Shown piece after piece: positions 13,204 to 33,627 of a stretch of 64,000 nucleotides of DNA. Numbering within the stretch: the first letter of the stretch is position 1; each line of letters begins with the position of its first letter. Origin of the DNA: Trichoplax adhaerens (taxonomy: Eukaryota; Animalia; Placozoa). The stretch is taken from positions 3,123,172 through 3,187,171 of the forward strand of contig NW_002060945.1 in assembly GCF_000150275.1 (NCBI RefSeq). The letters run 5' to 3'. The notes beneath the pieces were generated by a model. It was not told the DNA's origin and made no database searches. It was given only the letters and a program-made list of their open reading frames with translations. A program made the translations under genes and the position numbers.

Positions 13204-15347
13204 AATTATTGAAATCAAACCATCAAAAGAGACGCTGTCTTTAAACTATTCAAAATGTCCTACTGTTATATCAACGAACCATTAATACTACTATGGATAA
13301 AAATGAAGCTTTGGCAACATTTGCACTTATTTATTAGAATTGATCGTCACACTACAGGTTGCAAAATAACAGAGTTCCTAAAAGTGTTGAAGGAATCGAG
13401 AATCGATCAACAAACACATTGGGGTATTATAAATTCTTATTCTTATAAGCTAGCGATTCGTTTATCCCATCTCTTACTGTATGATACTGTAAATATTTGT
13501 TTCGATTGTTGTTGTATACTGCAAAAGTTTATAACGACATGATATCTATATATCATGTCCTTTCTGGATTGGTGCGCTGATTACTACTATGATTGTCGGA
13601 TATCTTTTTTGATTTATAGTAAAGTTCAACTGTATGCAGCATTATTTGTACATCTAATCATGCTTCAGTTATATTTGATTATATTGTAGCCTTTTTCATT
13701 CAAATGATGTTGCCAAATAGTACATGTATATTTAGTTATTTAATTTCTACCGTAACTGGATCTAATGATTAAAAAATTTAACTTTTGTAATCAATGTCTA
13801 ATTTGGTCGTAAACTTAACCCTCATCGGTATAGACTTTACGAAGTACTAATATGACTTAATTCCTCTGAAAGCTTATCACAACACTCTAAAAATAGGATT
13901 TGGTTACGAAATTACGCAAGGGTGATTTGTTACCTTGAATTTCAGAATTACACAACAGGCTCATTGTAAAGCCTAAGCTTATTAGGACCCTAGACGCCTA
14001 GTTTGCGTTCCTAATATGTACATGATGTATTCGTCGTATGTACAAAGGCAAGAATGTACTTTTTTAGTCACCTTTACATTCAGAATCGGTTAAATAACCC
14101 AATTATAGTATGAAAAGTATTACGATGAGGTATAGTGTGTCATCACTTTGATTGATGAATTTAAGTATGGACTACTCTAGATACGTATATCTAGTAATCC
14201 ATGGTTTGAGTAATGCTTGAATTGAGTAAAAAGTCGGTTACACCTTTTGCTAAATATTTTACATCGTTTGTTAAGCAAAAGAAGAGTCGTATTAAGCGTA
14301 ACATATACATACTTATAAACGGTATAATAAATGCCTACGGGGAAATATGCGATGAACGTTAAGGAAAATTTATTTAGTGTACCTTATGTATCCGATATAA
14401 TATTTATATAGGGTAGCAAGACATGGTATTATAACTTCTAACAAAGTTTCTTTCATCTGTTTCCTTGGTGGTATGCTTTACAAGAAATGCAAGCCAAAAT
14501 TCTACACGTAGAATCTTATCCCTGAGTTTTATGCATTATTTAAATAAGCTTTAATTTTATAATTTATAATTGTCTCTGCAGGAATACGATGGCTTGCAGT
14601 TAATTTACTTTTGAAACTAGAAATATACTTTGCTACTAAGTTTTTTCTATTACGATACAACTAGATACATTAAGTAAAGTTTATAAAACTGATCTTGATA
14701 TAATTTATTAAGATGACTCTTTCCGATACCTTGTCAGTATGTGAGTGGTATAATCTTAAAATTGGCACCGAGAATTTATCGACATAATTTTAAAGTTTCT
14801 TTATCAGATCTTACTGCAGAGATTGATAGCATGATTTTAAGTTTTCATTTGTTAAAACTTCCTTGTTGCCTTGCCCACCACTTATACAATTAGTCTATAA
14901 ACGAATTGGGTGGGAATTATCGTATAGAGAAGAATATGGACGTATACAAGATATCTCTTCAATAATTTTGTATTTTTAAAAACTTTATTTAACAGCAGTA
15001 ATGAATATATTTCATGATTGTTTCATCATATGAGAACTTATCTTATGAGCATATATTAACAATGATAAAGTCACTGAGAGGAGATATTTATTCCATGTGA
15101 CAGTATATTGCCAATAACTTTTATACGATTTTATGCAGTAATTGTTATTAGTAACTGCTCACTAACACAGATAATTTTTCAAGGCAAATCTTAAGTATTA
15201 AAATAGTGTACAGTATGTATATATAGACGTAATCTGTATGTACAACTGGACTAGGCTATCTTTATCAACTGTTCTAGTACACCTTCTCATATTGAATTTA
15301 AAGGTTTTAAGAAAAGCTACTCAGAACCTGTTAAAAATGATCTTTAG

Positions 15348-15583
15348 AGATTTGCTATAGTAAATTCGTAATTCTTAGAAGTTTAAAAGTTAAAAGTATT
15401 GATATAATCATCCGATATCGAGTCGATAAATGGAAATTTATTTTCCCCTTTCTATAGCCATGCCTACGTAAAGATTTGCTATAGTAAATTCGTAACTATT
15501 AAAAGCTTATAGTTGAAAAGTATTGATGTAATCATCCAATATCGAGTCGATGAATGAAAATCTATTTTCCCTTCCCAGCTATA
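15348..15583. repeat. Direct repeat of about 124 bp, 2 copies, in the 3' region of Hv-A
   Basis: AGATTTGCTATAGTAAATTCGTAA...AAAAGTATTGATRTAATCATCCRATATCGAGTCGAT at 15348 and 15472. Confidence 0.85.
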
Positions 15584-15602
15584 GTTACACTACAGCTGTA
15601 TT

Positions 15603-17359
15603 TTAAACGATAGAAATGACAGATGAGCTGTTTGGAGGTATGGCAGTTGGATACTCCGTTGCATCTAGCTCATCAGGTAATAACAAATCTTCAGGAATAG
15701 GGATATCATTTTCGACTAGTAGCGCCTATATGAGTATCCAGTTAGCCCAAATGAGTGGAAGTAAATCAATGATAAAATATACGGTAAATAGTAAAGAAAC
15801 TTATACACTTTTACCACCTAAACAGACGAAACTTAAACTATGATGGTTACTTATATCAAGCATTGCAAGAGTATCGACCTGACAATGATGCAATTTCGAT
15901 GTCAAATTGGCAATAAGTATCCGCTTCTGCTTTAGTTTATGATCGTGTTTTTCTTCCATTTCAGCTTTAACAGATACTACAATACCTATATAAAAGCAAA
16001 AGGCATGAATTGATCAACTGCATAAAAGTAAACGTCAAATATATCAGCTAGTTCATCGTTTAATAGTTGGTCTTATAGATCTGTGTTGTTATAAGATAGA
16101 ATTATGATAGTTTCAAATTGGCCTTATATTGAAGATCATTGTATCTATCATGCCTACTGTTGATAATCCTTGTAATACGCCATAGCCGCAATATCATTAA
16201 TAAGTTGATACCTTCAAATGCTAAATGGGAATAGTGGACATGACTAGAATAGAAAAATTAAATGAACAGATAAATCAATCGTTGAAATTCTGTTAAAGTG
16301 CAAATTAATATTGTTCCAAAATATACTATGATTGCTCACATGTAAAAAACATCTAGAATAAGGGAGATACAAACTATGAGGGCATCGAAAACTTCCAAAT
16401 AATACAAGAAAAATACAAGCCTAAAGGCGTAAATCTTCAATACAAACTGGAAGAGAAAATGAGAAAACTTAAAAAAAGTACTCCAATTTCAGTCATAGTT
16501 CAAATTCTTACTTCAATAACAAAGATGCCCAATATGGATATGCTAATAAAATGAAATCCAAGTACCACTGGACTATCATGATGGGCTAATCAAAGTAAAT
16601 TATCAAATATTAATATCTTTTAAGCGATTCCCTTGATAATATAACGCAGAGATACAGGATTTATGTAAAACAAATTATGCGATGATTATCAGAAAATGGC
16701 ATTGATTAGGATAGTAGTAGAGTTTTGCCTGCAATTTCCGTTCTATAGTCGCGTACTTACTTTCAATAACTTGTAAATCGATTAATAATTCGGCTATAAC
16801 GATTAGGAGGTCAATGACTACTAAAATAATAATTGTAGTATGGAACTTATGACTAAAAACAATTCGCTGCAATCGCTCCCTTTAGTAGAACAGAATCAAG
16901 GACACAATTAATATCAAGTGTATATTGCCAACGTTGAGACTCCTTGCCAGAGCAATAGCATTCTATTGATTTATAAAAGAGCTACTGTTTTGTACTAGTT
17001 AAATCAGATTTTAACAGTATTATTTTATTTGATCAATTATCAAAAGATATCCAGTAAAATAAGCTATGAGTCGTATATCTGACTTGAAATCCTCTACTTT
17101 TAATTAAAACAAAACGTAATTTCCAATAAGGGGTAGAAAATCATTTTGCTTTTAAGATCATAGCATCAGAGTTGGCATATAATTGTATCTAACATTGAAA
17201 CAAACTATTCCTAATTATAGCAGTTTCAAAGTATAATTTATTTTTTATAGTGAAATAACTTATTTTTAGATCTTTATACCTGGTAGACAGGTCTTCTATC
17301 GGTCCTGTTGGTACGACTGTAGATAGCCCATCAACGATATCTGTCTGGGAGTTACTCAT
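15603..17359 (-). CDS. HVCN1: Voltage-gated proton channel Hv1-like, paralogue A (7 coding exons)
   Basis: Spliced translation: MSNSQTD...(17359-17280); RERLQRIVFSHKFHTTIIILVVIDLLIVIAELLIDLQVIE (S1, Asp filter; 16879-16761); THHDSPVVLGFHFISISILGIFVIE (S2); FVLKIYAFRLVFFLYYLEVFDALIVCISLILDVFY (S3); IHVHYSHLAFEGINLLMILRLWRITRIIN (S4, RxWRxxR); coiled-coil exon; last exon ALLVENDIPIP...SVISIV*. All junctions are GT-AG and in frame. Confidence 0.93.
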
Positions 17360-20300
17360 ATTGAAATCCTAGAATGGTTTGACAATAATTTAATTTTCTA
17401 TAGTGGGTTTCGTTTAGCAAAATAACAGTAGAGTTGAAGACTTTAAATCCAATCACTGTTATGTTTTATTTCTTGAAATGACTAGAAATATCATTGAATA
17501 ATAAGCTCTATTCCATTAACTTGCTGGTAATAGCTTACAGTACTAAGCAAAACTAATACCGATCGATTTAGACCATCAAAATGCTATTTGACTAAAGGTA
17601 AAGATTTACTCCTTCTGAATTAAAGACTGAGTAGCTAAGATATCAGTCATAGCTTGATGCAAGTTATAATGTCCTAAAAATAATTCGATACAAACAATTA
17701 ATTCGGGGTATCGGATAGCGTATCTTCTAACGCTAATATATAATGCAAATAGAAGCCGTATATCTTGACCGTAGATCACTTTGATATAGATTAATAACTA
17801 AGAGTAAAATAAATACCGATAGTTTAATGCTGCAAACCGTTGTGATGATTACGAATTGAAGGTAACAAAAATTTCTCCCTTTTTTTATAATGATAATCTG
17901 AACAAGCAAAGAATCAGTTTTGGCTATGAAAAGCTATTTTATATGACGACTAGTAAAAACATATAGTATAAATAATTGCTAACTATAATAATGTTGTATA
18001 AATAATTAGCACTATAAGTACAATAAATGACGATAGCCTTACATCTCTAGGCTGATGATTGCTCAATGGTAAGGATTTCTCGCCTTTTGTCATCAAGACC
18101 TGTCTGATTTAGCAAGAAATCTGTAGTGGCTGGCTGGCTGATATTTCCTGGAAATATTAGTGATAGGGAACAAATGAATACTTTTCATTAAGCCACAGCT
18201 AGGTTGGGTCTTCAAGGACTGATTTGCTCGTTTATACTTCTTTTGATCTACTGATATTGGAAAATATGGTCGCATAAAAGGAAAATATGCCTACCATATG
18301 ATAGAGAATAGACCTTACAACCAACTTCACTAGTCGTGATATTCATGACTTATAATAATTACGTCATTCAAATGTAATAATAATTATAAATTAATAATTC
18401 TTTCTACTGATATTTACTTATTTATTAATTATTGCTTCAAGGAATTGTTTAATAAAATTTTATAGAGTATGAGTATTCATTAGAATAAAGATTTTACTGT
18501 ACCTCATTAAACATGATCATCACGATAAAGATTTAGTTTTATCGCCTATATGTTAGATAACCTTAAAATCAGAAATTTTGATAGCTATAGCTTGTAGTAA
18601 GTGAGTAACTTTTACTATCGAGATCTTCTTATGCAATCGTAATGATTCATTAGTATACTTAAAACCTACCTTAATCACATTCAAATCATATGTGGATTAG
18701 ACAGTAGTGTCATGCACTTAATGAATAATTTTTAATATTGACACTTTTATGATGATCAATTACTGCTTTAAAGTGCCGATTAATGATATTTTCAGAATAG
18801 CATTCGTTATGGTAAGAAACTCCTTTACTACTCGATGAATTTACATTCCAGACAAATCAATAGACTTTCACTATTAATACTTGCTTAAAGTACTAGTTGA
18901 TTATATTTTTTGGAATATTTATATTCACCATCTATACATTAGCCATCCTGAACTCTCGTTAGGGTTGGACAGCAGCATCTTGCAGTAAATGAATAATTAC
19001 GAGTATTAATACTGACTTATATAGCCAGCGTTATTGTGTTTAAGGTATAATATCAATTTTGGTGATATTCTTCTGGATATACCATTCGATGCCCATACTT
19101 CAACCATATTGAAATTCCAACAAGATTGACACTAGTATGATAAAGTAAATGAATAATTAGGTAACAATATTTGCTTATACAGTGGCCATATTTAATGATT
19201 GTGTTTAAAATATCGTCAAATGTATTCTTACCCTAACCCTAACAAGAAGCCTAAGCTGATACTTTTAGAATATCAATGTTCCTGAAGATATATAATTTGT
19301 TATAAGATGGCTTAGATTTGATCATTGTGATTAAGCTATAGTTCTGTTATTAAAGAATATATTATAACCAAGCTAAAATTTTATAAAACTGAATAGTAGT
19401 GCCTTGCGGGGTTTCTTATTATTGCAATATTAACGTGCGAAAACTTGTTTACTACATACTTGCGTATAGGAAGATTCCTACCAAGTTTTGTATTTGATCT
19501 TCACATGTTTGTTTGTTAATCCGTATCACATGATGACTATATTGCATCATGCTCGTTACTCAACCAGATAAGTAGCTAGTAATAACACCAAAGGTACCGT
19601 TGTAATATCGTCCAGTAATCATCTATTAGAGAATTCTTCTGTTACAATAAAATTTTACCATTACGGTGAAAAAACTATACAAGCATTCTAGCAGGTGTTC
19701 ACATAACTTGAAATCGAACCTGTAAGCAAAAATGGTACTAAGGACTCGCAAAACTAGTGTCCGATAATGTAATAGATTAATATTCATATTTGTTGCTAAA
19801 TTTAAGTAAAGATTTATTTATACTACAAATGAATACCAGAATGATATTGTACATTCAGTTATTTTCTTTAGTATTTACCGAATAGTAATTTCTTCATATA
19901 AGGATTAAAAAAGAATAAGAATTATAGCGATTGAATCATGTATATGTTGGTATTACAATACGTTTTATCATGACTTTAGTAACACTAATGTATTTACTGC
20001 ATATACTTTCTTTTAAATCCTTTCTTATTTTTATACATAAGCTACTCGACATACATGCATAATTACTGGCTTACTATCAACGATTTATAAAGTTACAGTA
20101 CTTACTTTCTCTCTTACGACATATATAAGAAAGGAGATTATGTTAATTTCATCAACATTTAAAAAATTTTTAAATAAACATTGCTATATGTAAATTAAAT
20201 GATTACAAAAAAACTATTTCTCTTTCTGATTTCTTAAAACTGCACCATCTTAATTGAGTAAAGTATATTAAGTACAGCTCAATCTTTATTCCATAGGCTT

Positions 20301-21556
20301 ACATAATCCATCATAGAGTAATTTTTCAAGTTTAAACGAAGCACAGTATCTACAAACCTTGGCATTATAATTATCAGTGGATTAATAGTTATAACCCAAA
20401 GCAAACTCAAATAACCATCACTAGTATCCTCCATTAAATATTTAAGTGTAGTAACCAATAACAGATTGATCCAGTATGCCATAGTATCGCTGATACTATG
20501 GACTGACAAAGTCTTCAGTGGCAATAAAAATGGATCTGTAACATGTGTATCTTGCTATTCGTCATCAGCTTCAAGTCATGCGATAAAGTTATTATGCTTA
20601 TATATAATTAACAATCATTCATCGTGGCATGATCACGCAACATTTTTTTGCTTTTAAAACGCTAATCTGTAACAGAAGGATTGACAATACAATAGAACAC
20701 TGTTTTTATTGCCCATAGTCATAACTTGAATTTACATATTCAAAAAATGAACATTTTCCTTTGTTAAAGGGCCCAGTAAGTAACAAGATTAAAATTAAAA
20801 TCACTAATTACACAAAGGATTAAGATATCTTTTAGTTATAGTGGATATGTATACTCTTAAAATAGAATTTCGTAAAAAAAAGTTACTTCTAAGTGAATAA
20901 GATAAAGTCAAGATCTTTACACCACATAGCACAACATGTTTGTGCAAAGTCGCCTTATACTGTGCGTCCTCGTTTAAGCATTTCGAAAATACTTTTATAT
21001 TGAGTGCGAACGTCGCAAATATCAATTACTCAAGCTAAATATTCGTATAAAAAGAAATCCTACATAAGTTAAAGGATGAAGTCATTGAACACTCCAATAA
21101 AACAAAATGTTAAATGCAGAATTATCGATTTGCAACAGGTTATCATAAACGTACAACACCATATGTAGATTTATAATCGCTACATAAGTCACACACCCTG
21201 GGAAATAAATTTTAAGATATAGTACATAATAGAGCACAATCTATAGTGTAAAAAGTTTGTAGGCTAAAATACATTTTACTGTCTAGGTTATAACAGCTAT
21301 ATCTATAATAACTGCATCGTTAGGGTAATAGTAATACTAAATTATTGCTAGCTTCATTTGTACACTAAGTTTCTGTTACAATAGCAATTAATTACCTGAC
21401 TATTTCGAACTGTTTTAACTTTATTGTGTGTTTCTATTCTATTAATTTTTGTAACGTACTTACAAACACATAACGATTATTTTGTTTTAATAAAAGCAGA
21501 TTTCAATCTTTAACAATTTAACGTTAAACGTACTGTAATAGCTCAGATTTATAATC

Positions 21557-23479
21557 TTAGCCAATGTAAGCCGATGATGTAGACTTTGCTGACGAGCCTG
21601 CAATATCCTATAATTAATTAATTCGCATGAAAAAATTACTGAATGTAATGAATGATTTATTAATATCAAGTAACTTATTCGTTGTCAAATTTTCATGCTA
21701 CTGCATCGACTTATAATATACAGTATTTAATATTATTAATGAAAATTTTTCCTTACTAAATAATCCATGTAACTTACAACAGTAATTTCTTCCGATGCTG
21801 AACCGTTGGCTTGAGCAGTACTGTTTCCATTTAAATCTACCTCGAGAAGGGGTTTCGGAATTGGTATATTTCTGTCCGTTAATACCTTTTTCAGCAGCTG
21901 AATTTCAGCCTAAAGGAAAATTTGACGATCATATATGTTTTATTGTTGTTAATTTATTGCTACAATCTTGTAAGTTAATTTCAATGCAAATTTTAACCTC
22001 TTTACGATCTAATTTTTGTTCCAGGTATGAACGTGTTTTTTCAAGTTCGCGCCTTAAATGATGTATTTTATCGTTGGCTTGTGATTTAACGGAACTTATA
22101 ATACCTGAGATAAATTTATTCCATAGTAGAATATGTTAGAAAGAAAGCTACAAGAATAACATGTGAAAGGAGGATTTCACACTATTTCCGTACCATTGAC
22201 AATCCTTGCTATACGCCACAACCGAAGTACTACAAGTAATCCGACTCCACTTAAGGCTTCAGAATTTCTAAATGGAACATAGTCATTGAAATAATATTCT
22301 TTAAATTGCAACATTAATTATACTCCTATATGACAGAATTCCTATCGAAAATTCTATTCCTTACGAGTATGCAATATCCAAGACAAAAGAAACAATAACG
22401 ATCAACGCATCAAAAACTTCAAAATAATGTAAGAAGAATGCTAAATCGGATGCATATAGCTTCAGTACGATCTAATAAATAGAATCCATTTAAAAGAACA
22501 TCAGGATTTTACTTTGTCGCCAGATTAGAAATGTATAATTTTTATTCAAGATATATCCTCAAGTACCTACCTCAACAAGAAAAATTGCCAAAATAGCAAT
22601 ACTGGTGAAATGGAATGCACGTGCAAGTGGACTTGTATGATGTACTAAATATTAATTCATCGATCAAATCGATGATGGAAAACCAAACAGGGTCATGAAA
22701 TTATCAAAACTTAGTAGTAGTAATCATTGTCGTTACTAATCATAACAAAACAGCTAATTTGTATGCTTTCAAAACGTGGAAATTTCCCAGTTAATTAGAT
22801 ATACTTACCTTTTATAACACTTAAATCTATCAATAATTCAGCAATAACAATAAGGGCGTCTAATATTACTAGGACCACTATGGCGATATGAACTTTGTGG
22901 CTATATATTAGTTGTCTTAATTTGGCACGATGACTAGAAATAAAATAATGGAGGAGAGATACGTTATTGAATCTTACGACATTGATACAATCACTATTGT
23001 GCTATATTAGCGGCGTATATTCAATAGCACTAATATAGCTACCAACTACTGTATCAAGATATAAGTAACTTACTCAGATCTCCATGTTACTGATTGAGGC
23101 GGATTCATTCCTTCATTATCACCATGTACCGCAAATAACGTTTCACTATTATTGTCACCATCGTCAATCATCTTTTCATAGCTAGATAGAAAGATTGTCC
23201 GTGTTACTGACTAGTATTAGAGCATAGACCATTATCCAATAAAATTACATAATAATATTAATTAAGACAAGATAGTCTAAGCAGTTAATTAATAGCAGCG
23301 GATTTCTACTGAACAATAACCTATAGGATAATATTTCCGTCAGTATTATTTTGTATGTGGCTGCAAATCGTAAACTACCATCCCTCTAAAGACAATTTTT
23401 TAGTCATCGTATTGAAGCCCTTGTTACGTTCTAATCCTTGGTATTGTACATTGGTATTCACTAATCGTTTGATTTTCAT
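21557..23479 (-). CDS. HVCN1: Voltage-gated proton channel Hv1-like, paralogue B (about 9 coding exons)
   Basis: HRAKLRQLIYSHKVHIAIVVLVILDALIVIAELLIDLSVIK (S1); VHHTSPLARAFHFTSIAILAIFLVE (S2); IVLKLYASDLAFFLHYFEVFDALIVIVSFVLDIAYS (S3); ALSGVGLLVVLRLWRIARIVNGIISSVK (S4); coiled coil IHHLRRELEKTRSYLEQKLDRKEAEIQLLKKVL; ends DIAGSSAKSTSSAYIG*. The start could instead be the second Met in exon 1 (about 23407). Confidence 0.94.
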
Positions 23480-25569
23480 CAATAAAGTAATTGCAAGGAA
23501 GGGAAAAATTCAATTCAATGATGTTATTGACTAGTCCTATGCAATATGGTAATAATACACGTATAAGAGTATAGGGTAAGCTAGACTAAAAATATCTACT
23601 GTAGCTAGCTCATAGTAAATTTCAAGTGTAGTTTCTAAAAATTCTGTAGTACAGTATATCGTAGTCACTAAAAAGTATCGTTACAGAGTATTGGTTTGAC
23701 TAAGTTGCTCGTTAGCAATAACTTTCAAATATCGTTTCATAAGCTTTACAATAATTATGATAAATAAGCAAAAGTATCATACAATCAATAAACTATTAGC
23801 AGACCAACAACTAGCCCGTTAATAATAAGTTTAAAATGGAATTAGTAATACGCCACAGTATGTTGTAATTATAATAAATTACTTCTTTTCATGACATTGT
23901 ACGTCTTTGCGTAGCTTTAATGATTCAACAACCACACAATCTATTGATGGTGTAGCTGAATACTGAAATTACAATGTGCCCTAACAGGTTATGCAATAAC
24001 CGTAATGTTATTCAACTTGAGCAAGCCATCTAAATGAGAAAGCAAGGCGTTGGTACAGATCGTCGAAAAAGGCCAATAGAAGAATATTTTAAGCTCTAGT
24101 ATAACTCTATCTTAAGCCCATCAGTTTAACTCCAAGTCATGTATAACGAGACTGAGGAGGTTATGTTTTATTCATGTGTTTAAAGACTACAAATAGGCAG
24201 ATTGATGAAGAAACTAACGCCTGTCTATTTTCAACTACGAGTAAAAGCCATTCGTTTTTCATCTATTTGGTGATATAACAGTTTTGAACTTTACTACAAG
24301 TGAGAAATTGTCTAGTTTTGACTTTCAATCAGCCTCGTTGGCTGACTACATATTTAGATTGTAATCGTCATGATGACAATGGCTTGTAACTGCGATGGAA
24401 ATGAGTGATTCGTTTCTACTCGTAGGTTTCATATTCTATTATTAATATGATTACTATATTATTACAGTCAATCAACTTTCAATAGTGCGTATTTTAATAG
24501 CATATCTAGCCATGATTCCAATTTGGATGTTTATTCTTCCATTCATTAGAGTATGGCTACGTGAGTGCAACTATAAAGGTGAAAATAATGACCATCCTGA
24601 ACAGCAACTTCTTGATGGCGATGTTGGGATGGATACTACAGTATTAGCAGGTTTAGCAAGCATCAAGCGCAGCCATTGACAGTTAAAGGGAGTTATTATT
24701 GCCATCCCTATACCTTATAGCGTTAATATAATAGTAATGGTTAGGATACTATTATCCTGTCAATAAAGAAGTTACTCTTAGCCGCATCAAAAGCCAATTG
24801 ATTGGCATGGCATTAGGGAAACGGTGTTTTGATGCACTTTGATGTATACTTTTGACGAGGAGGGAGGTACCGACTGCTTCATCACTTTCAATAAAGGCCA
24901 TCATGATCGTTGATCATGAAGGCTATCGATTATGGTAAACTGTATCTTGTATCCCATTAAGATAGAACTATTCTATTGGGATTGGATCTCCAACAAGACG
25001 GTCAATGAGAAATTTGGAGATGGTTTAGAGAACGATTGGAATGGACATAATAATATACTGTACAAGAGATATGCAATTTTCGAAATGATTATGATCACCA
25101 TCATCGATTGTCAACACGATCGTAGAACAGTACAATAATGACAGGTCCTTATTCAAGATCGTTAAGATAGGAAAATCATGAGTAAGAATAAAGTGTGCGC
25201 ATAAGAGAAAGAGAGGGAGAGAGAAAAAACTGAAGTAGAACATGGTGCATGCCATAACATTGGACTTATTTTGTTCAGGTTAGTGTGAAGAGAGAACGCT
25301 TACCCTGTCTCCATGTTGAATGTTGAAGGATTGGTGGATCGATCGGGTAACTGTCCCTTGGTGTTGATTCACTTAATTGTACGGAATAATTTCGCGTACT
25401 AGACGTCTACTCCACCAAATAGTAGATTGATGGAAGGAATAGAAGCTGTTCAACGGCAGAATGAAGAAATAGAAGTCCAATCTCGCTATGAAATCATTTG
25501 TTTAGCAGCAAATCATGGAGGAGAAAATGGCTCCAGATCAAGGCGTTGACTTGACAAACAAGAGGGTGG

Positions 25570-26010
25570 TTAGGGGCCAGGCCGAGCAAGTCCTGTACAC
25601 CTATTACAGAAGACCGGCGGGTAGGACACTCTCCAGTACTAGTATAGCACGGTACGTCACGGTACGGGACGCATGATAGTGTACTGGTATCGTCGTGGAC
25701 GACTGGACGACCAGATGCAGTCCTTTGTAGGGGCCAGGCCAAGCTACTCCTGTACAGTGTCGTACACTAGTGTACGACACTGTTAAGTACCAATACGGTA
25801 CGGTACGTTACGGCACGTTACGGTATGGTACGTATGATAGTGTACTGGTATCGTCATGGACGACTGGACGACTAGATGCAGTGGAGTGTCCTTGACTCCT
25901 TGTGAGTACGGGATACGGGGCGTCCAGTACAGTGTCTTGTATGACTGTACAGTACTGTACTGTGCTGTAGGTAGCAGACCAGACCACTAATTAGCAGTGG
26001 TCTGGTACGT
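25570..26010. repeat. GC-richer composite element: diverged ~155-bp direct repeat, perfect 30-bp palindrome and 11-bp-stem hairpin
   Basis: TAGGGGCCAGGCC..CCTGTACA at 25571 and 25728; ATGATAGTGTACTGGTATCGTCRTGGACGACTGGACGACYAGATGCAGT twice; palindrome 25754-25783; hairpin 25978-26006. Confidence 0.75.
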
Positions 26011-27261
26011 ATCAGTCCCGTGTCCTGCATTGACCATGGAAGGCATTGGACGGACTTTTTTGTACCAGATAAGTCGCTCAGTATGGATCTTCCGCGTCTG
26101 TTATCCAAATCACTCGTATTTATTTGAATCACATTGATGATCTAAAGTTACTGCTTCCAAATAGAGCTTAGCAACAGGTAATGGAATGCAATGTAACTGT
26201 ATTTCATTGAGAAAAAAGCAGGCAGTCAATTCACAATCGACTGCCTGCATACTAAAGTACTGTCGTACCAAGCGTTGATCTTGCTGTAATTTGTTGACCA
26301 AATGAGGCCCAGATGTCTGTCCGTCCAAAAGAGTGGTACGTACTATGAGCCCATGACTTGACTGTGCAAGTGCCTATAGTAACATAGATACTCCAGTTTC
26401 AAGTCACGTGAACGCCGATGAAAGCGCTTGAACCTACAGTACTGTACGATGTCGGTCTGTATAGCAATTTTGTCATATTAAATAAACGAAGGAGAGAGCG
26501 ATACTGCCAACAGATCAGAGACTGATTAAGCCCCCTGAGATCACCACAAATTGGAACTTAAAGTTGAATTTACAGCACTTTTCACGACTTAGTATGACAG
26601 GTCTATATACAGTACAGTATACTGTAAATCTGCTGAGCATTCTGATGGCATTTGGCACGGACCACTTCCAGTAGTCCATGGGCAATTGGGCATGGGTGTA
26701 TGCAACTGTACATGTCGCTAGGCAACAGGATCCTCACGCTTATGACCACCGACCGACTTTGTTGTAATAGAACTTCTATAAATCTTGGACTATACATATT
26801 CATCATATAATGAATGAAGTATATAGAGAACTAATTTCTGTTACATAAAAGTTGTCACTTAATCACTGCAAACATTGATATCAATTACTACTAATTTGCA
26901 ATTGCTATTTGATGATTATCAATCATCAATTAATTATCAAGCATGACAATCAAGCCAACATCAATTAAAAGGCAAGAAACCAACAATGAATTCAATCAAG
27001 CCCACGACAACTACTTGTCAGCATCCTTGATTAGTAAAACGCTACGGTAAAATCAAGTCAAGTCTAGAATATGCAATCCCATCTTAGTATAACCGCAAGA
27101 AGAGCTTTAGTAATCGATCCTCCTAGGTTGGAACTATTTTTCTTCTGTTTTAAAGTGAGAACGGACCTGAAACGATAAGGTATACTTTGCGTTTCTCTGA
27201 AGGATAGTAATCAAATTGAGCTCACTCAACAGAAGGTAGTTTCAAAACCTGGCGTTAAACT

Positions 27262-28329
27262 ATGAACACGAACCAGCTGATAGCAAACCCTGTTGACGAG
27301 CAAGAGCCATTACAAGAAGACATTAATCAAGAGGTAGACACTTCTTCTATTGTGATCATACCTTTCAGATTAGAAGCTACCATTAGACCAGCCGATCAGG
27401 TCAGAGGGTCTTTTTATGATCATTACTTAACACGTAAAATTACAAATCATGTAACTGCTACGATTATAGTCGAAGGCATGATAAGAACTCAACCAGAAGG
27501 ACAACCTGATCTACATCCAATACATATACTTAACAATTATCATCAACAGCTTTCTTATAATCTTGATAACCATGCAAATTGGCCCGAGTATATCTTAGAT
27601 GATGAGTTAGGTCAAGATCAATCATTTGGCTTGCTACTGATCCCAGGTATGGCTAGAAAGACAATAGAAAAGCTACCTAATCACTGTCAACTTCGCCAAG
27701 AATTAGAGTCGAGAGCAATCAGGAAAGCACGACTAAGAGGTCAACCAATTCTTGGTATTTGTGCGGGCAGCTGGCGTATTTGGGAGATTTTTGGTGAGCT
27801 TTATGTGGCTACACCAAATGGCTATGAGCTAAGAAGAACATTACAACTTCAAGACGTTCAGGATCATATGTATTATAGAATGACCTCTTTAAGTAGTCTA
27901 GGAGAGACTGTAGGTAATAATGAAATGGTTCATTATGTACTAATACAACAAGATTCTCTTCTAAGTTGTATTATGGACTTTCAGCTGGATGCTGAAGTGC
28001 AAAAAATTCCAGTGAATAGCGTACATTGGAAATCACCTGTAGATGCGGACCATCCAGTTTTAAGTGTTTCAGCAATATCTATAGGAAATTGTAATGCTAA
28101 ACATAGACATGGGGAAATGATGCAGCCAGAAGAAGAAATAGTCGAGGCTTTTGAATCTAAATATGGTGCTCCAGTGATAGGGATACAGTGGCACCCCGAA
28201 GCTTTTTACAACAATACAAATGTTGAATTTCATCCAAATAGCCAATTGAATGTACTAAAATTTATGACAAAAGCTGGTGATGCCTATCAAAGCAAGCGTG
28301 CCTTTTTAACAATGTTTTCAGGTTTTTAG
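27262..28329 (+). CDS. Class I glutamine amidotransferase-like protein, peptidase C26 / PuuD (gamma-glutamyl-GABA hydrolase) family; intronless
   Basis: 355-aa uninterrupted ORF with family motifs GLLLIPG, PILGICAG (nucleophile Cys), VNSVH, IVEAFE and IGIQWHPE (His-x-Glu). Confidence 0.9.
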   Translation: MNTNQLIANPVDEQEPLQEDINQEVDTSSIVIIPFRLEATIRPADQVRGSFYDHYLTRKITNHVTATIIVEGMIRTQPEGQPDLHPIHILNNYHQQLSYNLDNHANWPEYILDDELGQDQSFGLLLIPGMARKTIEKLPNHCQLRQELESRAIRKARLRGQPILGICAGSWRIWEIFGELYVATPNGYELRRTLQLQDVQDHMYYRMTSLSSLGETVGNNEMVHYVLIQQDSLLSCIMDFQLDAEVQKIPVNSVHWKSPVDADHPVLSVSAISIGNCNAKHRHGEMMQPEEEIVEAFESKYGAPVIGIQWHPEAFYNNTNVEFHPNSQLNVLKFMTKAGDAYQSKRAFLTMFSGF

Positions 28330-31300
28330 CAATAATTTGAAATGTCGTTGAAATTATTAATTGTTGAAAATAGATAAATAATTTTGCTTTATCCTACTAT
28401 TCGCAACAGATTTGGTTAAAAATTTACAACATACTACTTCGCTTGTATCAATTGTACCCTCGGTACTGAAAAGTTCTTGAAGCACTTGATTTATCTGAAG
28501 TCATGCGTCTTGAAAAATTGGAACCAAAGTCCTTATATAGTGGCATATATCGAGTGATAATAAATATAATCTACTTGTATTACAATTACGTTAAGGTATA
28601 AGAAGTTTTACATGTTTTGATCGAGATTATTTTACTAATGTTAAAATCTTCTCAGAGAGTGCTCCTACACAAGATGGTCTACACTTGATAATGAGAAGAG
28701 CAGTTGTTTTATACCTAAGCCTAGGAGATCTATATATTGCACATTGGTGTTTGAGATAGTCAAGGTCCATGTCTTAACCAGCTTACCCTTGAGTAATGAC
28801 AGCTGTTTATAAATAATTATAGGTTCTATCTGCCCAAAACCTTATGATAGCTAACTTCAGCATGGATAAGATAGCATGATCCTGGTAGGATGAATGATCA
28901 ACATTAAATTGCTAGAGGTGACTATCCACATTTAAACCATAACAACGGATATAAAGCCGATGAGTACCAACGCTGAAGTATTGCTGTCAATCATTTTATT
29001 ATATAGTAAAGGCAAAGGTAATCTTTGGATAAGAAGATTATTTACATATAACTATAAAAATTAGGAAGTAAAAATATCGTAAAAGATTGAAATATCTCCA
29101 ATCGCATTTGCTTCCTGGTACCATTCTTTGGTAGTATATTAGGGAGCCGATCTATAGCAATATTTAACAGCCGCTACTCCTGAGTTCTAATATAACACTA
29201 ATATCAACTAGGTACAACTGAAATCATGAATATTTTGTTGAACCGATTCTTAAAGATCTATTTAATACTTCAATACTAGAATATATTGTACTACACTGCA
29301 CACCAAAATCTATAATAACATAATTTTATACTTCATTTCACGATTTATGTTTGAATCGATCCAGAGTGTTCAAACGTTTATACGTTGCAGAAATGGTGTA
29401 ATTTCACTGTAATATTTATGTTTTTTAATGTATGATAAAATTTTATGCTAATTTTTTTCTGTCCTGCTATCTAATTTTGTTCCTACATTTCAGTTGATGT
29501 TATGATTTTTATAGAGGACAGCGTGAACCCAAATGCTTGATCTGGGTTCTAATTTAAGAATGCTGGTCTGTCTTAATTTTTAGTTTGTATACTGTATACC
29601 GTAGACTCACTCAGTTTTTTTGATAGTTAAATACTATATAACAGTCTATCATTTGTTGATGACCTTATATACTGTACACACTCGATATTAAATGAATACG
29701 ATGAAGCAAATAACATCAACTAGATCAACTTGCCACATGATTCATATTTTACGGTAGCGTGATGATATTTGTAGATGTTTGGTTGTAAAGAAGGATCGAT
29801 GTTTTGGAGTAGTAGTAGACTACAAACATATTTTATTTATTCAAAACAACTATTTAATGTATTGTAAACTGCAAATTTTAAGACTTTGCAACTGCTCCTA
29901 TAGCTTTGCCTAAGATTTTTTATTTTTACTGTAAGATATGAAAACATAAACAAAATGGTTGTATGGATATGCTGAAATCTTCCTCAATGCGATTATGGAA
30001 TCACAATTATGAGTTATTAAAAACTTCATAAATTCCTTTACATTACTGTCCAACCCTTTTCTTATATAAAGATGTAAAAACTGTCAATAAGGCGGTTACA
30101 TTTGCTTCAATTACAGTAATTCATTGATGGAAATACTAAATGTAAACAATTATACCACTATTTATCATAAAAATAGCCACTTAATCCAAATTCTTATTTC
30201 TACTCTACTTTCAAAACCTAGTATTGAACAATTTTATTGAATTTATCATCTGGAATAACCGCCCATGTAATAACAGATAAATGCGTACAGGCTATCTATA
30301 TTACAGCATTTTGGCATTAAATAATACAAAAACTTACGCATTCGTTTGAAGATGTGTACGTGTTCTAATAGTACTACTGTAGAATTATACAAGTACTACA
30401 ATTGAAATCTTGTACTCTCTAAATTATGTTTCGTAACTGCTGGTGAGGAAACACCACTAAAAAGAAATAGATCCGCTCAGTTCACTGTTCCTTTGTCACT
30501 TGCATCATTATTCTTGTACGTATCTGCAAAAGTGTGCTAACTCTGTGCCTGTACAATTTTTAGAAATAAATAGCTTGGGATTAATTATAGGGTTATCACG
30601 ATAGATTGTTAAGATACTTTATACATTTTTAGATTCTTTAGGAAGACTAAATGAAGAACTCGGACAATGTGATCATTTTACACTATGAAACAACGTGTAA
30701 CAGTATTAAAATTTCAAAAATAGCAATATTCGTCATATAATACGGATTAGTTCTATGCTTGAAAGCAATTGAACATTTTATTGTAGGAATTGTAGCCATG
30801 CAATAAAATTTTAAAAGATCACAGCATCAATACAAAGTACAAACGCATAGAAAACTGTATGTGAAATACTTGTTTACTGTTACAGTAATTATTTATTATA
30901 ACCTAACAAAAATTGAACCCACCAGAAACATTACATTAGGTAAATAAGACTAAAAAATAATATTTCAATGCTCAATTGCGTTCTGGACTTGACCAGACAC
31001 CATTCACTGCAACCCAGAGTACACAACCGACAATGTAGTTATTCAGATTATTTACTTTGCGTAGGGTATTTTAGGAAGCTTTGTAGGAGCATATGTTACA
31101 TCTCCTACAATTTATACGAACTCGCTGCCTTTTTTTCTATTCCATCCAATCATCCTACGGATATAATCATACAATCAAATCTTCCCAAGGCTCTGGCGTT
31201 AAAAAAACACGCACGCTAACTTATCAAATATATTTTTGCCAAGTTATTCTGTATTTCTGAATTCTGTAGGTATAAATTGCATTATACTCTGAACAATAAA

Positions 31301-31466
31301 GCTCATAATAAATAAGATACGAAGCTATAAGTTACATCACATGCTTATTGAATTTTCCATAAAAAATCTATGATTGCTCTAAAGACAGTAACTAGCTATT
31401 AATGAAAATGTTCTCTATATTAATTATAACATTTCCTTTTATCGATGTTAGAAGTGTTCTATTAAA

Positions 31467-33627
31467 ATGTCTAAAAAGGTGAAAACTGAAGATAAAGATT
31501 CTTATATCGATATTCTTGATGAAGAAAGTGCTTCAGTTCGTATTGATCATGCTAATCAGTGAGTATTATCACGTTATCCGTATGGTTATTTATCATACGA
31601 ATCGTAAACACTTTTAAATAGTTTAAAGCACTGAAAGGATAAGATCGACCGTACTTTATTTAATTTTTATATCGAATGAATTTTACTAACGTTAGTACTT
31701 TACAACAAAATAGTGACTGTCTGCATAAAACAGAGGAAATCATGGAGCACCCTATAACTCAATTAATTCTCATCCTACTGGTATTCATTGACTGTGGAAT
31801 TGTTATTGCAGAGTTGCTCATAGACAGAGATGCAATTCGAGGTATTCATTTCCAACATCTTTCATTTGTATTACTATCTTGAAAAATGCTATTTTAATCC
31901 AAGCTAAGTATTGCTAAATGAACAAAAATAACGATGTCATCGATTGAATTTTACCTGATAAACCTTATTTTGTCGTATCTATAGTTGAAGACGTCGAAGA
32001 TGTGAAGGAAGCTTTCCATTATACCAGCATAATGATATTAGGAATTTTCTTATTCGAAGTCAGTAAATCAATAATGTTTTTACATTATGCACCTTTTCAA
32101 ACATTATTCTATAGTCTACGATCACATTTCATTCGTCTTTAACTTTCTATTTAATATATCCATATTGCATGGCTAGGTAGCATTAAAAATATGTGTGGAA
32201 GGATTAGCGTTCTTTCTTCACTATATCGAAGTACTCGATGCCTTAGTTGTTATTATATCCTTTATTGTGGATATTATGTCGCTGTAAGTAAAGTAAAATA
32301 CTGTCACTAAATATCTATTAATTAATCTATCAATCAATCAGTTGTGCCAATAATTTACATATGATACTGAATTGTACACTACTATTATTATATCTAGAAT
32401 AGTCTCTTATTATTGTAGAATGACATGATTAATTTCGTTTCTTACCGTCAATTATCTTTTTAAGAGTACCTTACTTTTATAATCATGTATTTAATCTAAT
32501 TTGTTACGCAAGAGCTGCTGAAAATAAGCTTCGAGGCATCGGACTGCTTATAATTTTACGTCTGTGGCGTATTGCAAGAATCGTCAACGGTAGCTTAAAT
32601 AATTATAAAGAATATGCGTTTGCTACAAAAAAAGTTTCTCGTAATATGCATTTATTAGATTGCTTGTACCCTAATTGAGTCTGTATCTATTTTGAACTGG
32701 CTGTAGTTAGAGATTTAATATAATTTTGAGATGGTATCTAACTTTTAGGAATTATAGCATCCGTCAAAAAGCATATGCGTAAACGATTAGAAACAATAAC
32801 AGAGGATAGAAATCGGTGCAGAAGAAAATTAAATCGAGCTATTAAAGTAGCGCGTGCCAAAGTGGTAAGATTAGTAGGGTAATTCGAAACTCTGAGTGTT
32901 CGCTTAGTTTCTTCTTCCTAGTAAAGTCATATAATGTAACACAACATGTACGGCGTACGTTGAGCAAGAGACATGGTATTAAAATATTTATTTCTATACT
33001 CTTTCTTTAGTAATGTAATATAACGATTTTGATTTATAATTCTTATTAGGAGGAAATAAAATTACTAGAAGGTATACTAGAAAAAGAAGGTATCGAATAC
33101 CGTCAGATTGTAGCTAAAACAGAACAAGGAGATGGAGATCCTGCGGAAGTTAAATTAGTTATTGAAGAAGGTAAACCTTGAATAATTTATACGTAACTAG
33201 CAGACTAGCTACTCATTTGACATTTATATGATCTTAAAGTATATTGATTGAGCTGAATACTAAAAATTTATTTTAATCATCTATTCCAGATATTATTGAT
33301 GACAAAGATAATCTAGAAGAAGAGCACAAATCTATCGATGGAAAAGAAGAAAGCAAAAGCAATCAGGAAGAGAAAAGTAAATCTATCGATGAAAAAGAAG
33401 AAGGCAAAGGTAATCAGAATGAGGAAGGTAAATCTGTAGATCATAAAGAAGAAGATAAATCATTAGAAACTGGTCAAACAGAGAAGAGTGAGAAAGATGC
33501 TCAAGAAGGTGATAAACGAAGTAGTAGAGGAGATAGTGATGCTGCAAGTCACCATTCTGAGAGGAAGGCAGACGATGCTAAAGATAATAAGGAAGAAGTA
33601 GAACCCGAAGTACTTGTATATACATAA
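31467..33627 (+). CDS. HVCN1: Voltage-gated proton channel Hv1-like, paralogue C, with long charged C-terminal tail (8 coding exons)
   Basis: MSKKVKTEDK...(31467-31558); MEHPITQLILILLVFIDCGIVIAELLIDRDAIR (S1); VEDVEDVKEAFHYTSIMILGIFLFE (S2); VALKICVEGLAFFLHYIEVLDALVVIISFIVDIMSL (S3); LRGIGLLIILRLWRIARIVNGIIASVKK (S4); basic coiled coil; final exon about 33290-33627 rich in E/K/D, ending EPEVLVYT*. Confidence 0.93.

What the first reader, a model, noticed from the sequence alone, without database searches (positions are those of the whole stretch)
15603..33627. Cluster of three intact, diversified voltage-gated proton channel (Hv) genes
Seen: three multi-exon genes within 18 kb each encode a stand-alone S1-S4 voltage-sensor domain plus coiled coil and no pore domain. 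All keep the S1 selectivity Asp (VVID, VILD, VFID), S2 FH...F-x-x-E, S3 EV(F/L)DA...D and S4 RLWR-I-x-R-I-x-N. They share intron positions and phases across S1-S4, yet differ strongly in termini and loops. Established: most studied animals carry a single HVCN1, and RxWRxxR plus the S1 Asp are hallmarks of proton-selective Hv channels; multi-gene Hv sets are reported mainly in molluscs. Inference: old local duplication produced a three-channel proton-flux toolkit in a very simple animal, possibly split by cell type or compartment, or forming heterodimers.
Basis: partly seen in the sequence, partly recalled or inferred. Interest (0 to 1): 0.85.

Follow-up and report, generated by a model that had tools for sequence, protein, structure and literature searches.

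The report
Three proton-channel genes in Trichoplax
The window holds three real, intact and conserved voltage-gated proton channel (Hv1-type) genes of the placozoan Trichoplax; two are already described and the third is in the databases with a faulty model that drops its voltage-sensing helix, so this is a small correction, not a new kind of system.

Summary
Observation confirmed. Three multi-exon Hv-type genes lie at 15603-17359 (-), 21557-23171 (-) and 31467-33627 (+). They are the only Hv-like loci found in this 105.6 Mb genome. All keep every residue that is invariant or nearly so in animal Hv channels, have no pore or phosphatase domain, and share six intron positions and phases.

They equal TRIADDRAFT_54340, _54341 and _54343 of Trichoplax adhaerens. 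A 2023 review lists only two of them (54341 and 54343). The database model of 54340 skips the S4 helix. Spliced RNA contigs from two studies join an 86-nt S4 exon (16158-16243) to the next exon, so gene 1 is a complete Hv.

A second, divergent placozoan has all three orthologues with matching exon structure in the channel core. dN/dS is 0.07-0.16 for each gene. The six sequences form one clade (98/92), so two duplications predate that split.

Not tested:
- transcripts of genes 2 and 3
- proton currents
- division of labour between the copies
- heterodimers

Two acceptor sites of gene 3 in the database model are doubtful.

Verdict: ordinary family, modest novelty (a third placozoan paralogue, corrected). 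The joined gene 1 model was built only inside scripts and never sent to a search tool.

The parts
15603..17359 (-). Gene 1 coding span (TRIADDRAFT_54340); corrected protein 231 aa, 7 coding exons
   Evidence: Database protein P0002 mapped exactly; S4 exon corrected from RNA contigs; joined frame is open, 696 nt
17280..17359 (-). Gene 1 exon 1 (start ATG at 17359)
   Evidence: joint 16879/17280; in-frame stop upstream in both 5'UTR forms
16761..16879 (-). Gene 1 S1 exon (selectivity Asp in VVID)
16512..16585 (-). Gene 1 S2 exon, 74 nt
16340..16446 (-). Gene 1 S3 exon, 107 nt
16158..16243 (-). Gene 1 S4 exon, 86 nt (RLWRITRIIN). The public model stops at 16212 and so loses S4
   Evidence: Spliced contigs of runs X5 and X6 join 16158 to 15985; 27 of 28 residues identical in the other placozoan; matches Hv1 S4
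15879..15985 (-). Gene 1 post-S4 helix / coiled-coil exon, 107 nt
   Evidence: predicted parallel homodimer
15603..15725 (-). Gene 1 last coding exon with stop codon; the 3'UTR runs on to at least 15300
   Evidence: contigs continuous 15300-15724
17524..17674 (-). Gene 1 5'UTR exon, spliced to 17367 from either 17524 or 17559
   Evidence: joints 17367/17524 and 17367/17559
21557..23171 (-). Gene 2 coding span (TRIADDRAFT_54341), 255 aa. 8 exons: 23171-23074, 22933-22809 (S1), 22644-22571 (S2), 22471-22365 (S3), 22267-22194 (S4), 22104-21998 (coiled coil), 21909-21778, 21607-21557
   Evidence: P0003 mapped exactly with GT..AG introns; all 8 exons found in the other placozoan, exons 2-7 with identical lengths; no RNA check made here
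31467..33627 (+). Gene 3 coding span (TRIADDRAFT_54343), 372 aa as annotated. 8 exons: 31467-31558, 31696-31841 (S1), 31985-32058 (S2), 32177-32283 (S3), 32465-32589 (S4), 32749-32864 (coiled coil), 33050-33170, 33290-33627
   Evidence: P0001 mapped exactly; orthologue in L008; no RNA check made here
32465..32512 (+). Doubtful 48 nt of gene 3 (16 residues in the S3-S4 loop). The acceptor homologous to the other placozoan would start the exon at 32513
   Evidence: the matching stretch is intron in the other placozoan, with no in-phase acceptor there
31696..31713 (+). Doubtful 18 nt of gene 3 exon 2. The acceptor homologous to the other placozoan would start the exon at 31714
33328..33454 (+). 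51-nt tandem repeat (2.5 copies) inside the acidic, lysine-rich tail of gene 3
   Evidence: tail predicted disordered

Best explanation
The window carries the whole Hv (HVCN1-type) gene family of Trichoplax adhaerens: three paralogues in 18 kb. They were made by two local DNA duplications of an intron-bearing ancestral Hv gene in the placozoan stem line, and all three have been kept under purifying selection. Each encodes a stand-alone S1-S4 voltage-sensor domain followed by a cytoplasmic helix. By homology, each should work as a voltage- and delta-pH-gated, proton-selective channel. Protons would pass through the voltage sensor itself, selected by the S1 Asp paired with S4 Arg, and two subunits would be held together by the C-terminal coiled coil.

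Gene 2 is the slow-evolving canonical copy. Gene 1 has a His-rich S3-S4 loop and a short coiled coil. Gene 3 has a long stem branch, altered residues next to the S1 Asp, and a disordered acidic tail of about 130 residues. Genes 1 and 3 are therefore the derived copies, likely specialised in gating, partners or location.

Shown here: gene structures, family signature, transcription and S4 inclusion for gene 1, conservation, and the age of the duplications. Inferred: proton conduction, dimerisation and specialisation.
For: - Identity: the three database proteins are 100% encoded here and are TRIADDRAFT_54340, 54341 and 54343.
- Family: the best solved relatives are Hv1 (3WKV, 5OQK); for gene 2, other voltage sensors are at least 23 orders of magnitude weaker.
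- Signature: every column conserved in at least 80% of 47 other animal Hv sequences within the S1-S4 core is kept in all six placozoan sequences, apart from a few conservative changes. This covers the equivalents of human D112, E119, D123, H140, F150, E153, E171, D174, S181, D185, R205, W207, R208, R211 and N214.
- Architecture: Pfam Ion_trans matches only profile positions 1-109 of 241, so there is no pore. The gene 3 model folds as a voltage sensor plus one long helix 161-233.
- Gene 1 RNA: spliced contigs in runs from three studies. Two of them span S1 to the 3'UTR with the 86-nt S4 exon. The genome holds no intronless copy.
- Copy number: only these three loci in the genome.
- Orthologues: another placozoan has gene 2 and gene 1 in tandem, plus gene 3.
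- Selection: dN/dS is 0.11-0.16, 0.07-0.08 and 0.10-0.14 for genes 1, 2 and 3.
- Tree: placozoan clade 98/92, each orthologue pair 100. A shared K-to-Y change in all six sequences. The best non-self hit of gene 3 is gene 2.
- Intron positions are shared with Nematostella Hv1, so they are ancestral.
- Gene 1 C-terminal segment as homodimer: score 0.49 against best control 0.01. The mark was reached by 21 of 30 solved pairs of one chain and 0 of 23 single chains. Runs agree in at least 94% of contacts, and partner pLDDT is at least 80.
Against: - No current has been measured for any placozoan Hv.
- dS is saturated for genes 1 and 3 (1.4-2.7), so those ratios are rough.
- Contigs drop rare variants, so a minor S4-skipping isoform of gene 1 cannot be excluded.
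- The crude heptad scan is not significant for gene 1 (p 0.92) and is borderline for gene 3 (p 0.07).
- The dimer pass may reflect the model's memory of solved Hv1 coiled coils.
- Two acceptor sites of gene 3 are uncertain.
Confidence: 0.82

Rival explanations
1. One or both derived copies (gene 1, gene 3) keep the Hv scaffold but no longer conduct protons. They would act as voltage or pH sensors, or as modulatory subunits of gene 2, in the way some Hv-derived proteins described in the review have lost channel features.
For: Gene 3 has a long stem branch of 1.52. It has changed residues beside the S1 Asp (FIDCG against the usual LDAL) and R for L after the D123 equivalent. Gene 1 has a weak heptad pattern. 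The review notes Hv-like proteins that have lost the signature.
Against: Unlike those cases, both copies keep the S1 Asp, the S4 Trp, all three Arg and the charge-transfer residues. Both are under purifying selection. The unconventional mollusc AcHv3 still conducts protons.
Confidence: 0.12
2. Gene 1 is what the public model says: a truncated protein without S4, that is, a decaying or non-channel copy.
For: The models XP_002110913 and RDD43773 (P0002) use the donor at 16212 and lack S4. As a result they do not match Pfam Ion_trans.
Against: Spliced contigs from two studies use the donor at 16158 and include S4. The S4 exon is 27 of 28 residues identical in the other placozoan and has the same 86-nt length. 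It matches Hv1 S4.
Confidence: 0.03
3. The triplet is an assembly artefact, made of haplotypes or collapsed copies of one gene.
For: None beyond their closeness. Run X1 does show allelic variants.
Against: The copies are only 33-41% identical in protein and lie on both strands. Each has its own orthologue in another species.
Confidence: 0.01

Closest known systems
Vertebrate Hv1/VSOP (HVCN1; structures 3WKV mouse chimera, 5OQK human)
   Same: Stand-alone S1-S4 domain with the S1 Asp, RxWRxxR plus Asn in S4, F150/E153/D174 equivalents and a C-terminal helix. Gene 2 is 42-53% identical to vertebrate Hv1.
   Different: Three linked paralogues instead of one gene. All placozoan copies have Tyr where others have Lys before the S3 Glu. 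There is no clear equivalent of human H193 in genes 2 and 3. Gene 3 has a long disordered acidic tail.
The two Trichoplax adhaerens Hv channels listed in PMC10377628 (XM_002110878, XM_002110360)
   Same: These are genes 2 and 3 of this window, described as closely linked on NW_002060945.
   Different: The review does not list gene 1 (TRIADDRAFT_54340). Here it is shown to be a complete Hv, transcribed with S4.
Cnidarian Hv1 (Nematostella XP_001626501; coral Hv1)
   Same: Same intron positions and phases. S2 exon 74 nt, S4 exon 74 nt as in gene 2, coiled-coil exon 116 nt as in gene 3. 35-43% identity.
   Different: Nematostella has one extra intron that splits the S3 exon (54+53 nt).
Mollusc multi-gene Hv sets (AcHv1-3, CgHv4)
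   Same: Lineage-specific expansion of Hv genes with diverged termini.
   Different: The placozoan copies are all 'conventional'. They have no giant S1-S2 loop, no S4 Pro and no Lys at R3, and they form their own clade.
Voltage-sensing phosphatases (Ci-VSP, TPTE2)
   Same: Same voltage-sensor fold.
   Different: No phosphatase domain follows S4. Sequence matches are far weaker: E 5e-7 for gene 2, 6e-4 for gene 1, none for gene 3.

Membership tests
Hv (voltage-gated proton channel, HVCN1 type) | Asp in the middle of S1 (human D112), the proton selectivity filter | tested here: met
   D in VVID, VILD and VFID. The column is invariant in 47 other Hv sequences and in all six placozoan sequences.
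Hv (voltage-gated proton channel, HVCN1 type) | S4 signature RxWRxxR followed by Asn (R205, W207, R208, R211, N214) | tested here: met
   RLWRITRIIN in gene 1 and RLWRIARIVN in genes 2 and 3. For gene 1 the exon is in the transcript.
Hv (voltage-gated proton channel, HVCN1 type) | Charge-transfer and counter-charge residues (F150, E153, E171, D174, D185, E119, D123, S181) | tested here: met
   All present in all three genes and in their orthologues.
Hv (voltage-gated proton channel, HVCN1 type) | No pore domain (S5-S6) and no enzyme domain after S4 | tested here: met
   Pfam Ion_trans matches only profile positions 1-109 of 241. After S4 the proteins have only a helix and a tail. The fold search returns voltage-sensor domains only.
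Hv (voltage-gated proton channel, HVCN1 type) | Closer in sequence to proven Hv1 than to any other voltage sensor | tested here: met
   Hv1 structures are the top hits for all three genes. In the tree they sit inside animal Hv.
Hv (voltage-gated proton channel, HVCN1 type) | C-terminal coiled coil that makes a dimer | tested here: inconclusive
   Heptad scan p is 0.04 for gene 2, 0.07 for gene 3 and 0.92 for gene 1. Gene 3 has a long helix 161-233. Gene 1 segment as homodimer: score 0.49 against best control 0.01; the mark was reached by 21 of 30 solved pairs and 0 of 23 single chains; runs agree in at least 94% of contacts; pLDDT at least 80; the pass may come from memory. Pfam VGPC1_C gave no hit.
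Hv (voltage-gated proton channel, HVCN1 type) | Depolarisation-activated, delta-pH-dependent, perfectly proton-selective current | not testable with these tools
   Needs patch clamp of the expressed channels.
Voltage-sensing phosphatase (VSP/TPTE) | PTEN-like phosphatase and C2 domains after S4 | tested here: not met
   No such Pfam hit, and the open reading frames end after the helix and tail.

The most novel reading that the evidence does not exclude
The three placozoan Hv channels have divided their labour and differ in gating. One candidate is the canonical plasma-membrane acid extruder (gene 2). A second has a His-rich outer loop tuned to external pH or metals (gene 1). A third has a long acidic tail that directs it to an internal or secretory compartment used in external digestion (gene 3). 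They may also mix as heterodimers. That would give a natural set of three paralogues in one very simple animal for swap experiments on delta-pH sensing.
Probability: 0.3. Interest if true: 0.45.

Novelty: new member of a known kind. Interest (0 to 1): 0.27.

Why it matters
- It corrects the count of Hv genes in Placozoa from two to three.
- It shows that the public model of TRIADDRAFT_54340 / RDD43773 wrongly omits the S4 voltage sensor.
- It dates the expansion to before the split of two placozoan lineages.

Paralogous Hv channels are scarce in model animals. Three conventional, compact, diverged copies from one early-branching animal could therefore serve in sequence-swap studies of gating and pH sensing, and in asking what proton channels do in an animal without nerves or muscles. 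None of this changes what is known about how Hv channels work.

Tried and rejected
- Whole-protein word search with the gene 1 database model found only itself, which was uninformative.
- Pfam gave no Ion_trans hit for the S4-less model and no VGPC1_C hit for any copy.
- The crude heptad scan did not support a coiled coil in gene 1.
- tblastn of the window and six-frame searches of the whole genome found no fourth copy, pseudogene or intronless copy.
- A search of the scan's earlier findings by words was blank.
- RNA evidence for genes 2 and 3 could not be sought. The look-up of sequencing runs and read laying allow one call each, and the 6,000-letter limit cannot span two genes.
- No Logan transcript-derived proteins of these genes are in the protein collection.
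- The assembly-artefact reading and the pseudogene reading were both considered and rejected (see the rival explanations).
- The joined, corrected gene 1 protein was not sent to any search, fold or complex tool. It was used only inside scripts, built from window coordinates.
Full report
**What is there.**
The region is AT-rich eukaryotic DNA with short exons. Three sets of exons encode S1-S4 voltage-sensor segments:
- gene 1 on the minus strand, coding span 15603-17359
- gene 2 on the minus strand, 21557-23171
- gene 3 on the plus strand, 31467-33627

The S1 and S4 exons of gene 2, searched by reference against all solved structures, hit only the two Hv1 entries, 3WKV and 5OQK. A profile of the three S1 exons, searched against 1.84 billion representative proteins, returned three full-length proteins that are encoded exactly in this window: P0002 (213 aa, gene 1), P0003 (255 aa, gene 2) and P0001 (372 aa, gene 3). 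An exact look-up names them TRIADDRAFT_54340, 54341 and 54343 of Trichoplax adhaerens. The models for genes 1 and 3 are identical in Trichoplax sp. H2, and gene 2 has a 262-aa H2 counterpart there. Sources call them 'voltage-gated hydrogen channel 1'. The genome is 105.6 Mb in 1414 contigs.

**Gene models.**
All annotated introns are GT..AG. The three genes share six intron positions with phases 2,1,0,2,1,0. The S2 exon is 74 nt and the S3 exon 107 nt in each gene. Nematostella Hv1 has the same positions and phases plus one extra intron inside S3. The structure is therefore ancestral to these animals, and the copies arose by DNA duplication, not retroposition.

**The third gene.**
The public model of gene 1 uses a donor at 16212 and so skips 18 residues that make up S4. 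That is why it lacks the RxWRxxR motif and does not match Pfam Ion_trans. I laid contigs of four runs on 15300-17700.
- Runs X5 and X6, from two studies, each hold one spliced contig that joins S1, S2, S3, an 86-nt S4 exon (16158-16243), the next exon (15879-15985) and the last exon with its 3'UTR.
- Run X11, RNA on record and from a third study, holds the S1-S2-S3 joints.
- Run X1 covers the region unspliced and looks like DNA or unprocessed RNA.

The genome has no intronless copy, so the spliced form is RNA. The corrected protein is 231 aa. The ATG at 17359 is preceded by an in-frame stop in both 5'UTR splice forms, and the one coding difference seen in the RNA contigs is synonymous.

**Family membership.**
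Against solved structures:

| Gene | Hv1 match (E) | Other voltage sensors |
|---|---|---|
| Gene 2 | 4e-35 | best 1.6e-11 |
| Gene 3 | 2e-19 | none |
| Gene 1 (S4-less model) | 1e-19 | TPTE2 at 6e-4 |

The gene 1 S4 exon alone also matches Hv1 S4.

In an alignment with 47 other animal Hv sequences, every strongly conserved core column is kept in all three genes. That covers the equivalents of human D112, E119, D123, H140, F150, E153, E171, D174, S181, D185, R205, W207, R208, R211 and N214; the human numbering is from established knowledge. The exceptions are conservative, plus one Lys-to-Tyr change shared by all placozoan copies.

No pore or phosphatase domain follows S4. An AlphaFold model of gene 3 (mean pLDDT 67.5) shows four sensor helices, S4 running on as one helix to residue 233, and a disordered tail. 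Its structural matches are Ci-VSP and Hv1 sensor domains.

**Coiled coil.**
A crude heptad scan is Hv-like for gene 2 (p 0.04), borderline for gene 3 (p 0.07) and not significant for gene 1 (p 0.92). The gene 1 segment, residues 139-190 of P0002, folded as two copies gave a score of 0.49 against a best control of 0.01. The predicted contacts are parallel and in register.
- The mark was reached by 21 of 30 proteins solved as pairs of one chain and by 0 of 23 solved as single chains.
- The runs agree in at least 94% of contacts, and the partner's pLDDT is at least 80.
- The tool warns that a pass may come from memory of solved relatives.

This supports dimerisation but does not show it.

**Age and constraint.**
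Two short proteins among the hits (P0004, P0005) proved to be S1 exons read into introns on genomic Logan contigs of another placozoan. I call it PlB in the calls and parts. Its species name is not available to me.
- L007 carries the gene 2 and gene 1 orthologues in tandem, in the same order and orientation as here.
- L008 carries the gene 3 orthologue.
- Exon lengths in the channel core match, apart from the gene 3 cases noted below.

| Gene | Protein identity to orthologue | dN/dS (two methods) | dS |
|---|---|---|---|
| Gene 1 | 68% | 0.11-0.16 | 1.4-1.9 |
| Gene 2 | 89% | 0.07-0.08 | 0.8 |
| Gene 3 | 63% | 0.10-0.14 | 1.7-2.7 |

dS is saturated for genes 1 and 3, so those two ratios are rough.

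A careful maximum-likelihood tree of 55 Hv sequences, rooted on two chytrid sequences, puts the six placozoan sequences in one clade (98/92). Each orthologue pair has support 100, genes 1 and 2 are sisters (90/76), and gene 3 has a long stem branch of 1.52. The best non-self database hit of gene 3 is gene 2. Two duplications therefore happened in the placozoan line before these two lineages split, and all copies have been kept. The paralogues are 33-41% identical. No fourth copy exists in the window or the genome.

**Uncertain details.**
In gene 3 the annotated acceptors at 31696 and 32465 lie 18 and 48 nt upstream of the acceptors that are homologous to the other placozoan (31714 and 32513). 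The 48-nt stretch corresponds to intron there, where no in-phase acceptor exists. The 16-residue S3-S4 insert may be a Trichoplax-specific exon extension or an annotation error.

**What is known.**
The 2023 review 'Voltage-Gated Proton Channels in the Tree of Life' reports two closely related Hv channels in T. adhaerens, less than 10 kb apart on one scaffold (XM_002110878 and XM_002110360). Its supplement lists TRIADDRAFT_54341. By accession arithmetic these are genes 2 and 3. I found no paper that names gene 1. The same review shows that multi-gene Hv sets are common outside vertebrates: three in Sycon, two in Schistosoma, and up to eleven in bivalves. A separate coral study (PMC7941709) reports two Hv genes in Stylophora pistillata.

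**Method note.**
Whole-protein searches used only stored database proteins, and exons were searched by reference. The corrected joined gene 1 protein and the orthologue models were assembled only inside scripts, from coordinates, for alignment, tree and dN/dS.

**Verdict.**
This is a real, intact and conserved three-gene Hv cluster. The kind is known, two members are already published, and the third is a corrected new member. Proton conduction, specialisation and heterodimers remain inference.

Noticed in passing
window 27262-28329 (+): Intronless 355-aa open reading frame between gene 2 and gene 3. It matches Pfam Peptidase_C26 (E 8e-10) and GATase class I (E 9e-7). It sits in a stretch of higher G+C, about 0.39-0.41 at 24-28 kb against about 0.30 around it. 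It is already noted by the scan as a horizontal-transfer candidate; the transfer claim was not tested here.
   Followed up: partly
window 16158-16243 and public models XP_002110913.1 / RDD43773.1: The public gene model of TRIADDRAFT_54340, and its identical Trichoplax sp. H2 counterpart, uses a donor 54 nt too early and deletes the S4 helix. RNA contigs show the longer exon.
   Followed up: yes
window 15348-15571: 124-nt tandem repeat, 1.8 copies, 88% matches, inside the 3'UTR of gene 1. RNA contigs run through it.
   Followed up: no
window 17367-17674 (-): Two 5'UTR splice forms of gene 1. One joins 17559 to 17367 with GT..AG ends. The other joins 17524 to 17367, and the tool reports non-canonical ends for it.
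   Followed up: no
window 16617-16750 and 17321-17442: Run X1 holds two contig versions of these stretches that differ at several bases. This suggests two alleles or strains in that sample.
   Followed up: no
window 24400-26400, both strands: Dense overlapping open frames on both strands in the G+C-richer block, with peptide repeats such as YGT.RYGT. Tandem Repeats Finder reported nothing there at score 60. It may be a degenerate repeat or a mobile element.
   Followed up: no
L007 712-2377 and 5410-7584: In the other placozoan, the gene 2 and gene 1 orthologues keep the same tandem order and orientation, with about 3 kb between them. The contig ends before the last exon of gene 1.
   Followed up: partly
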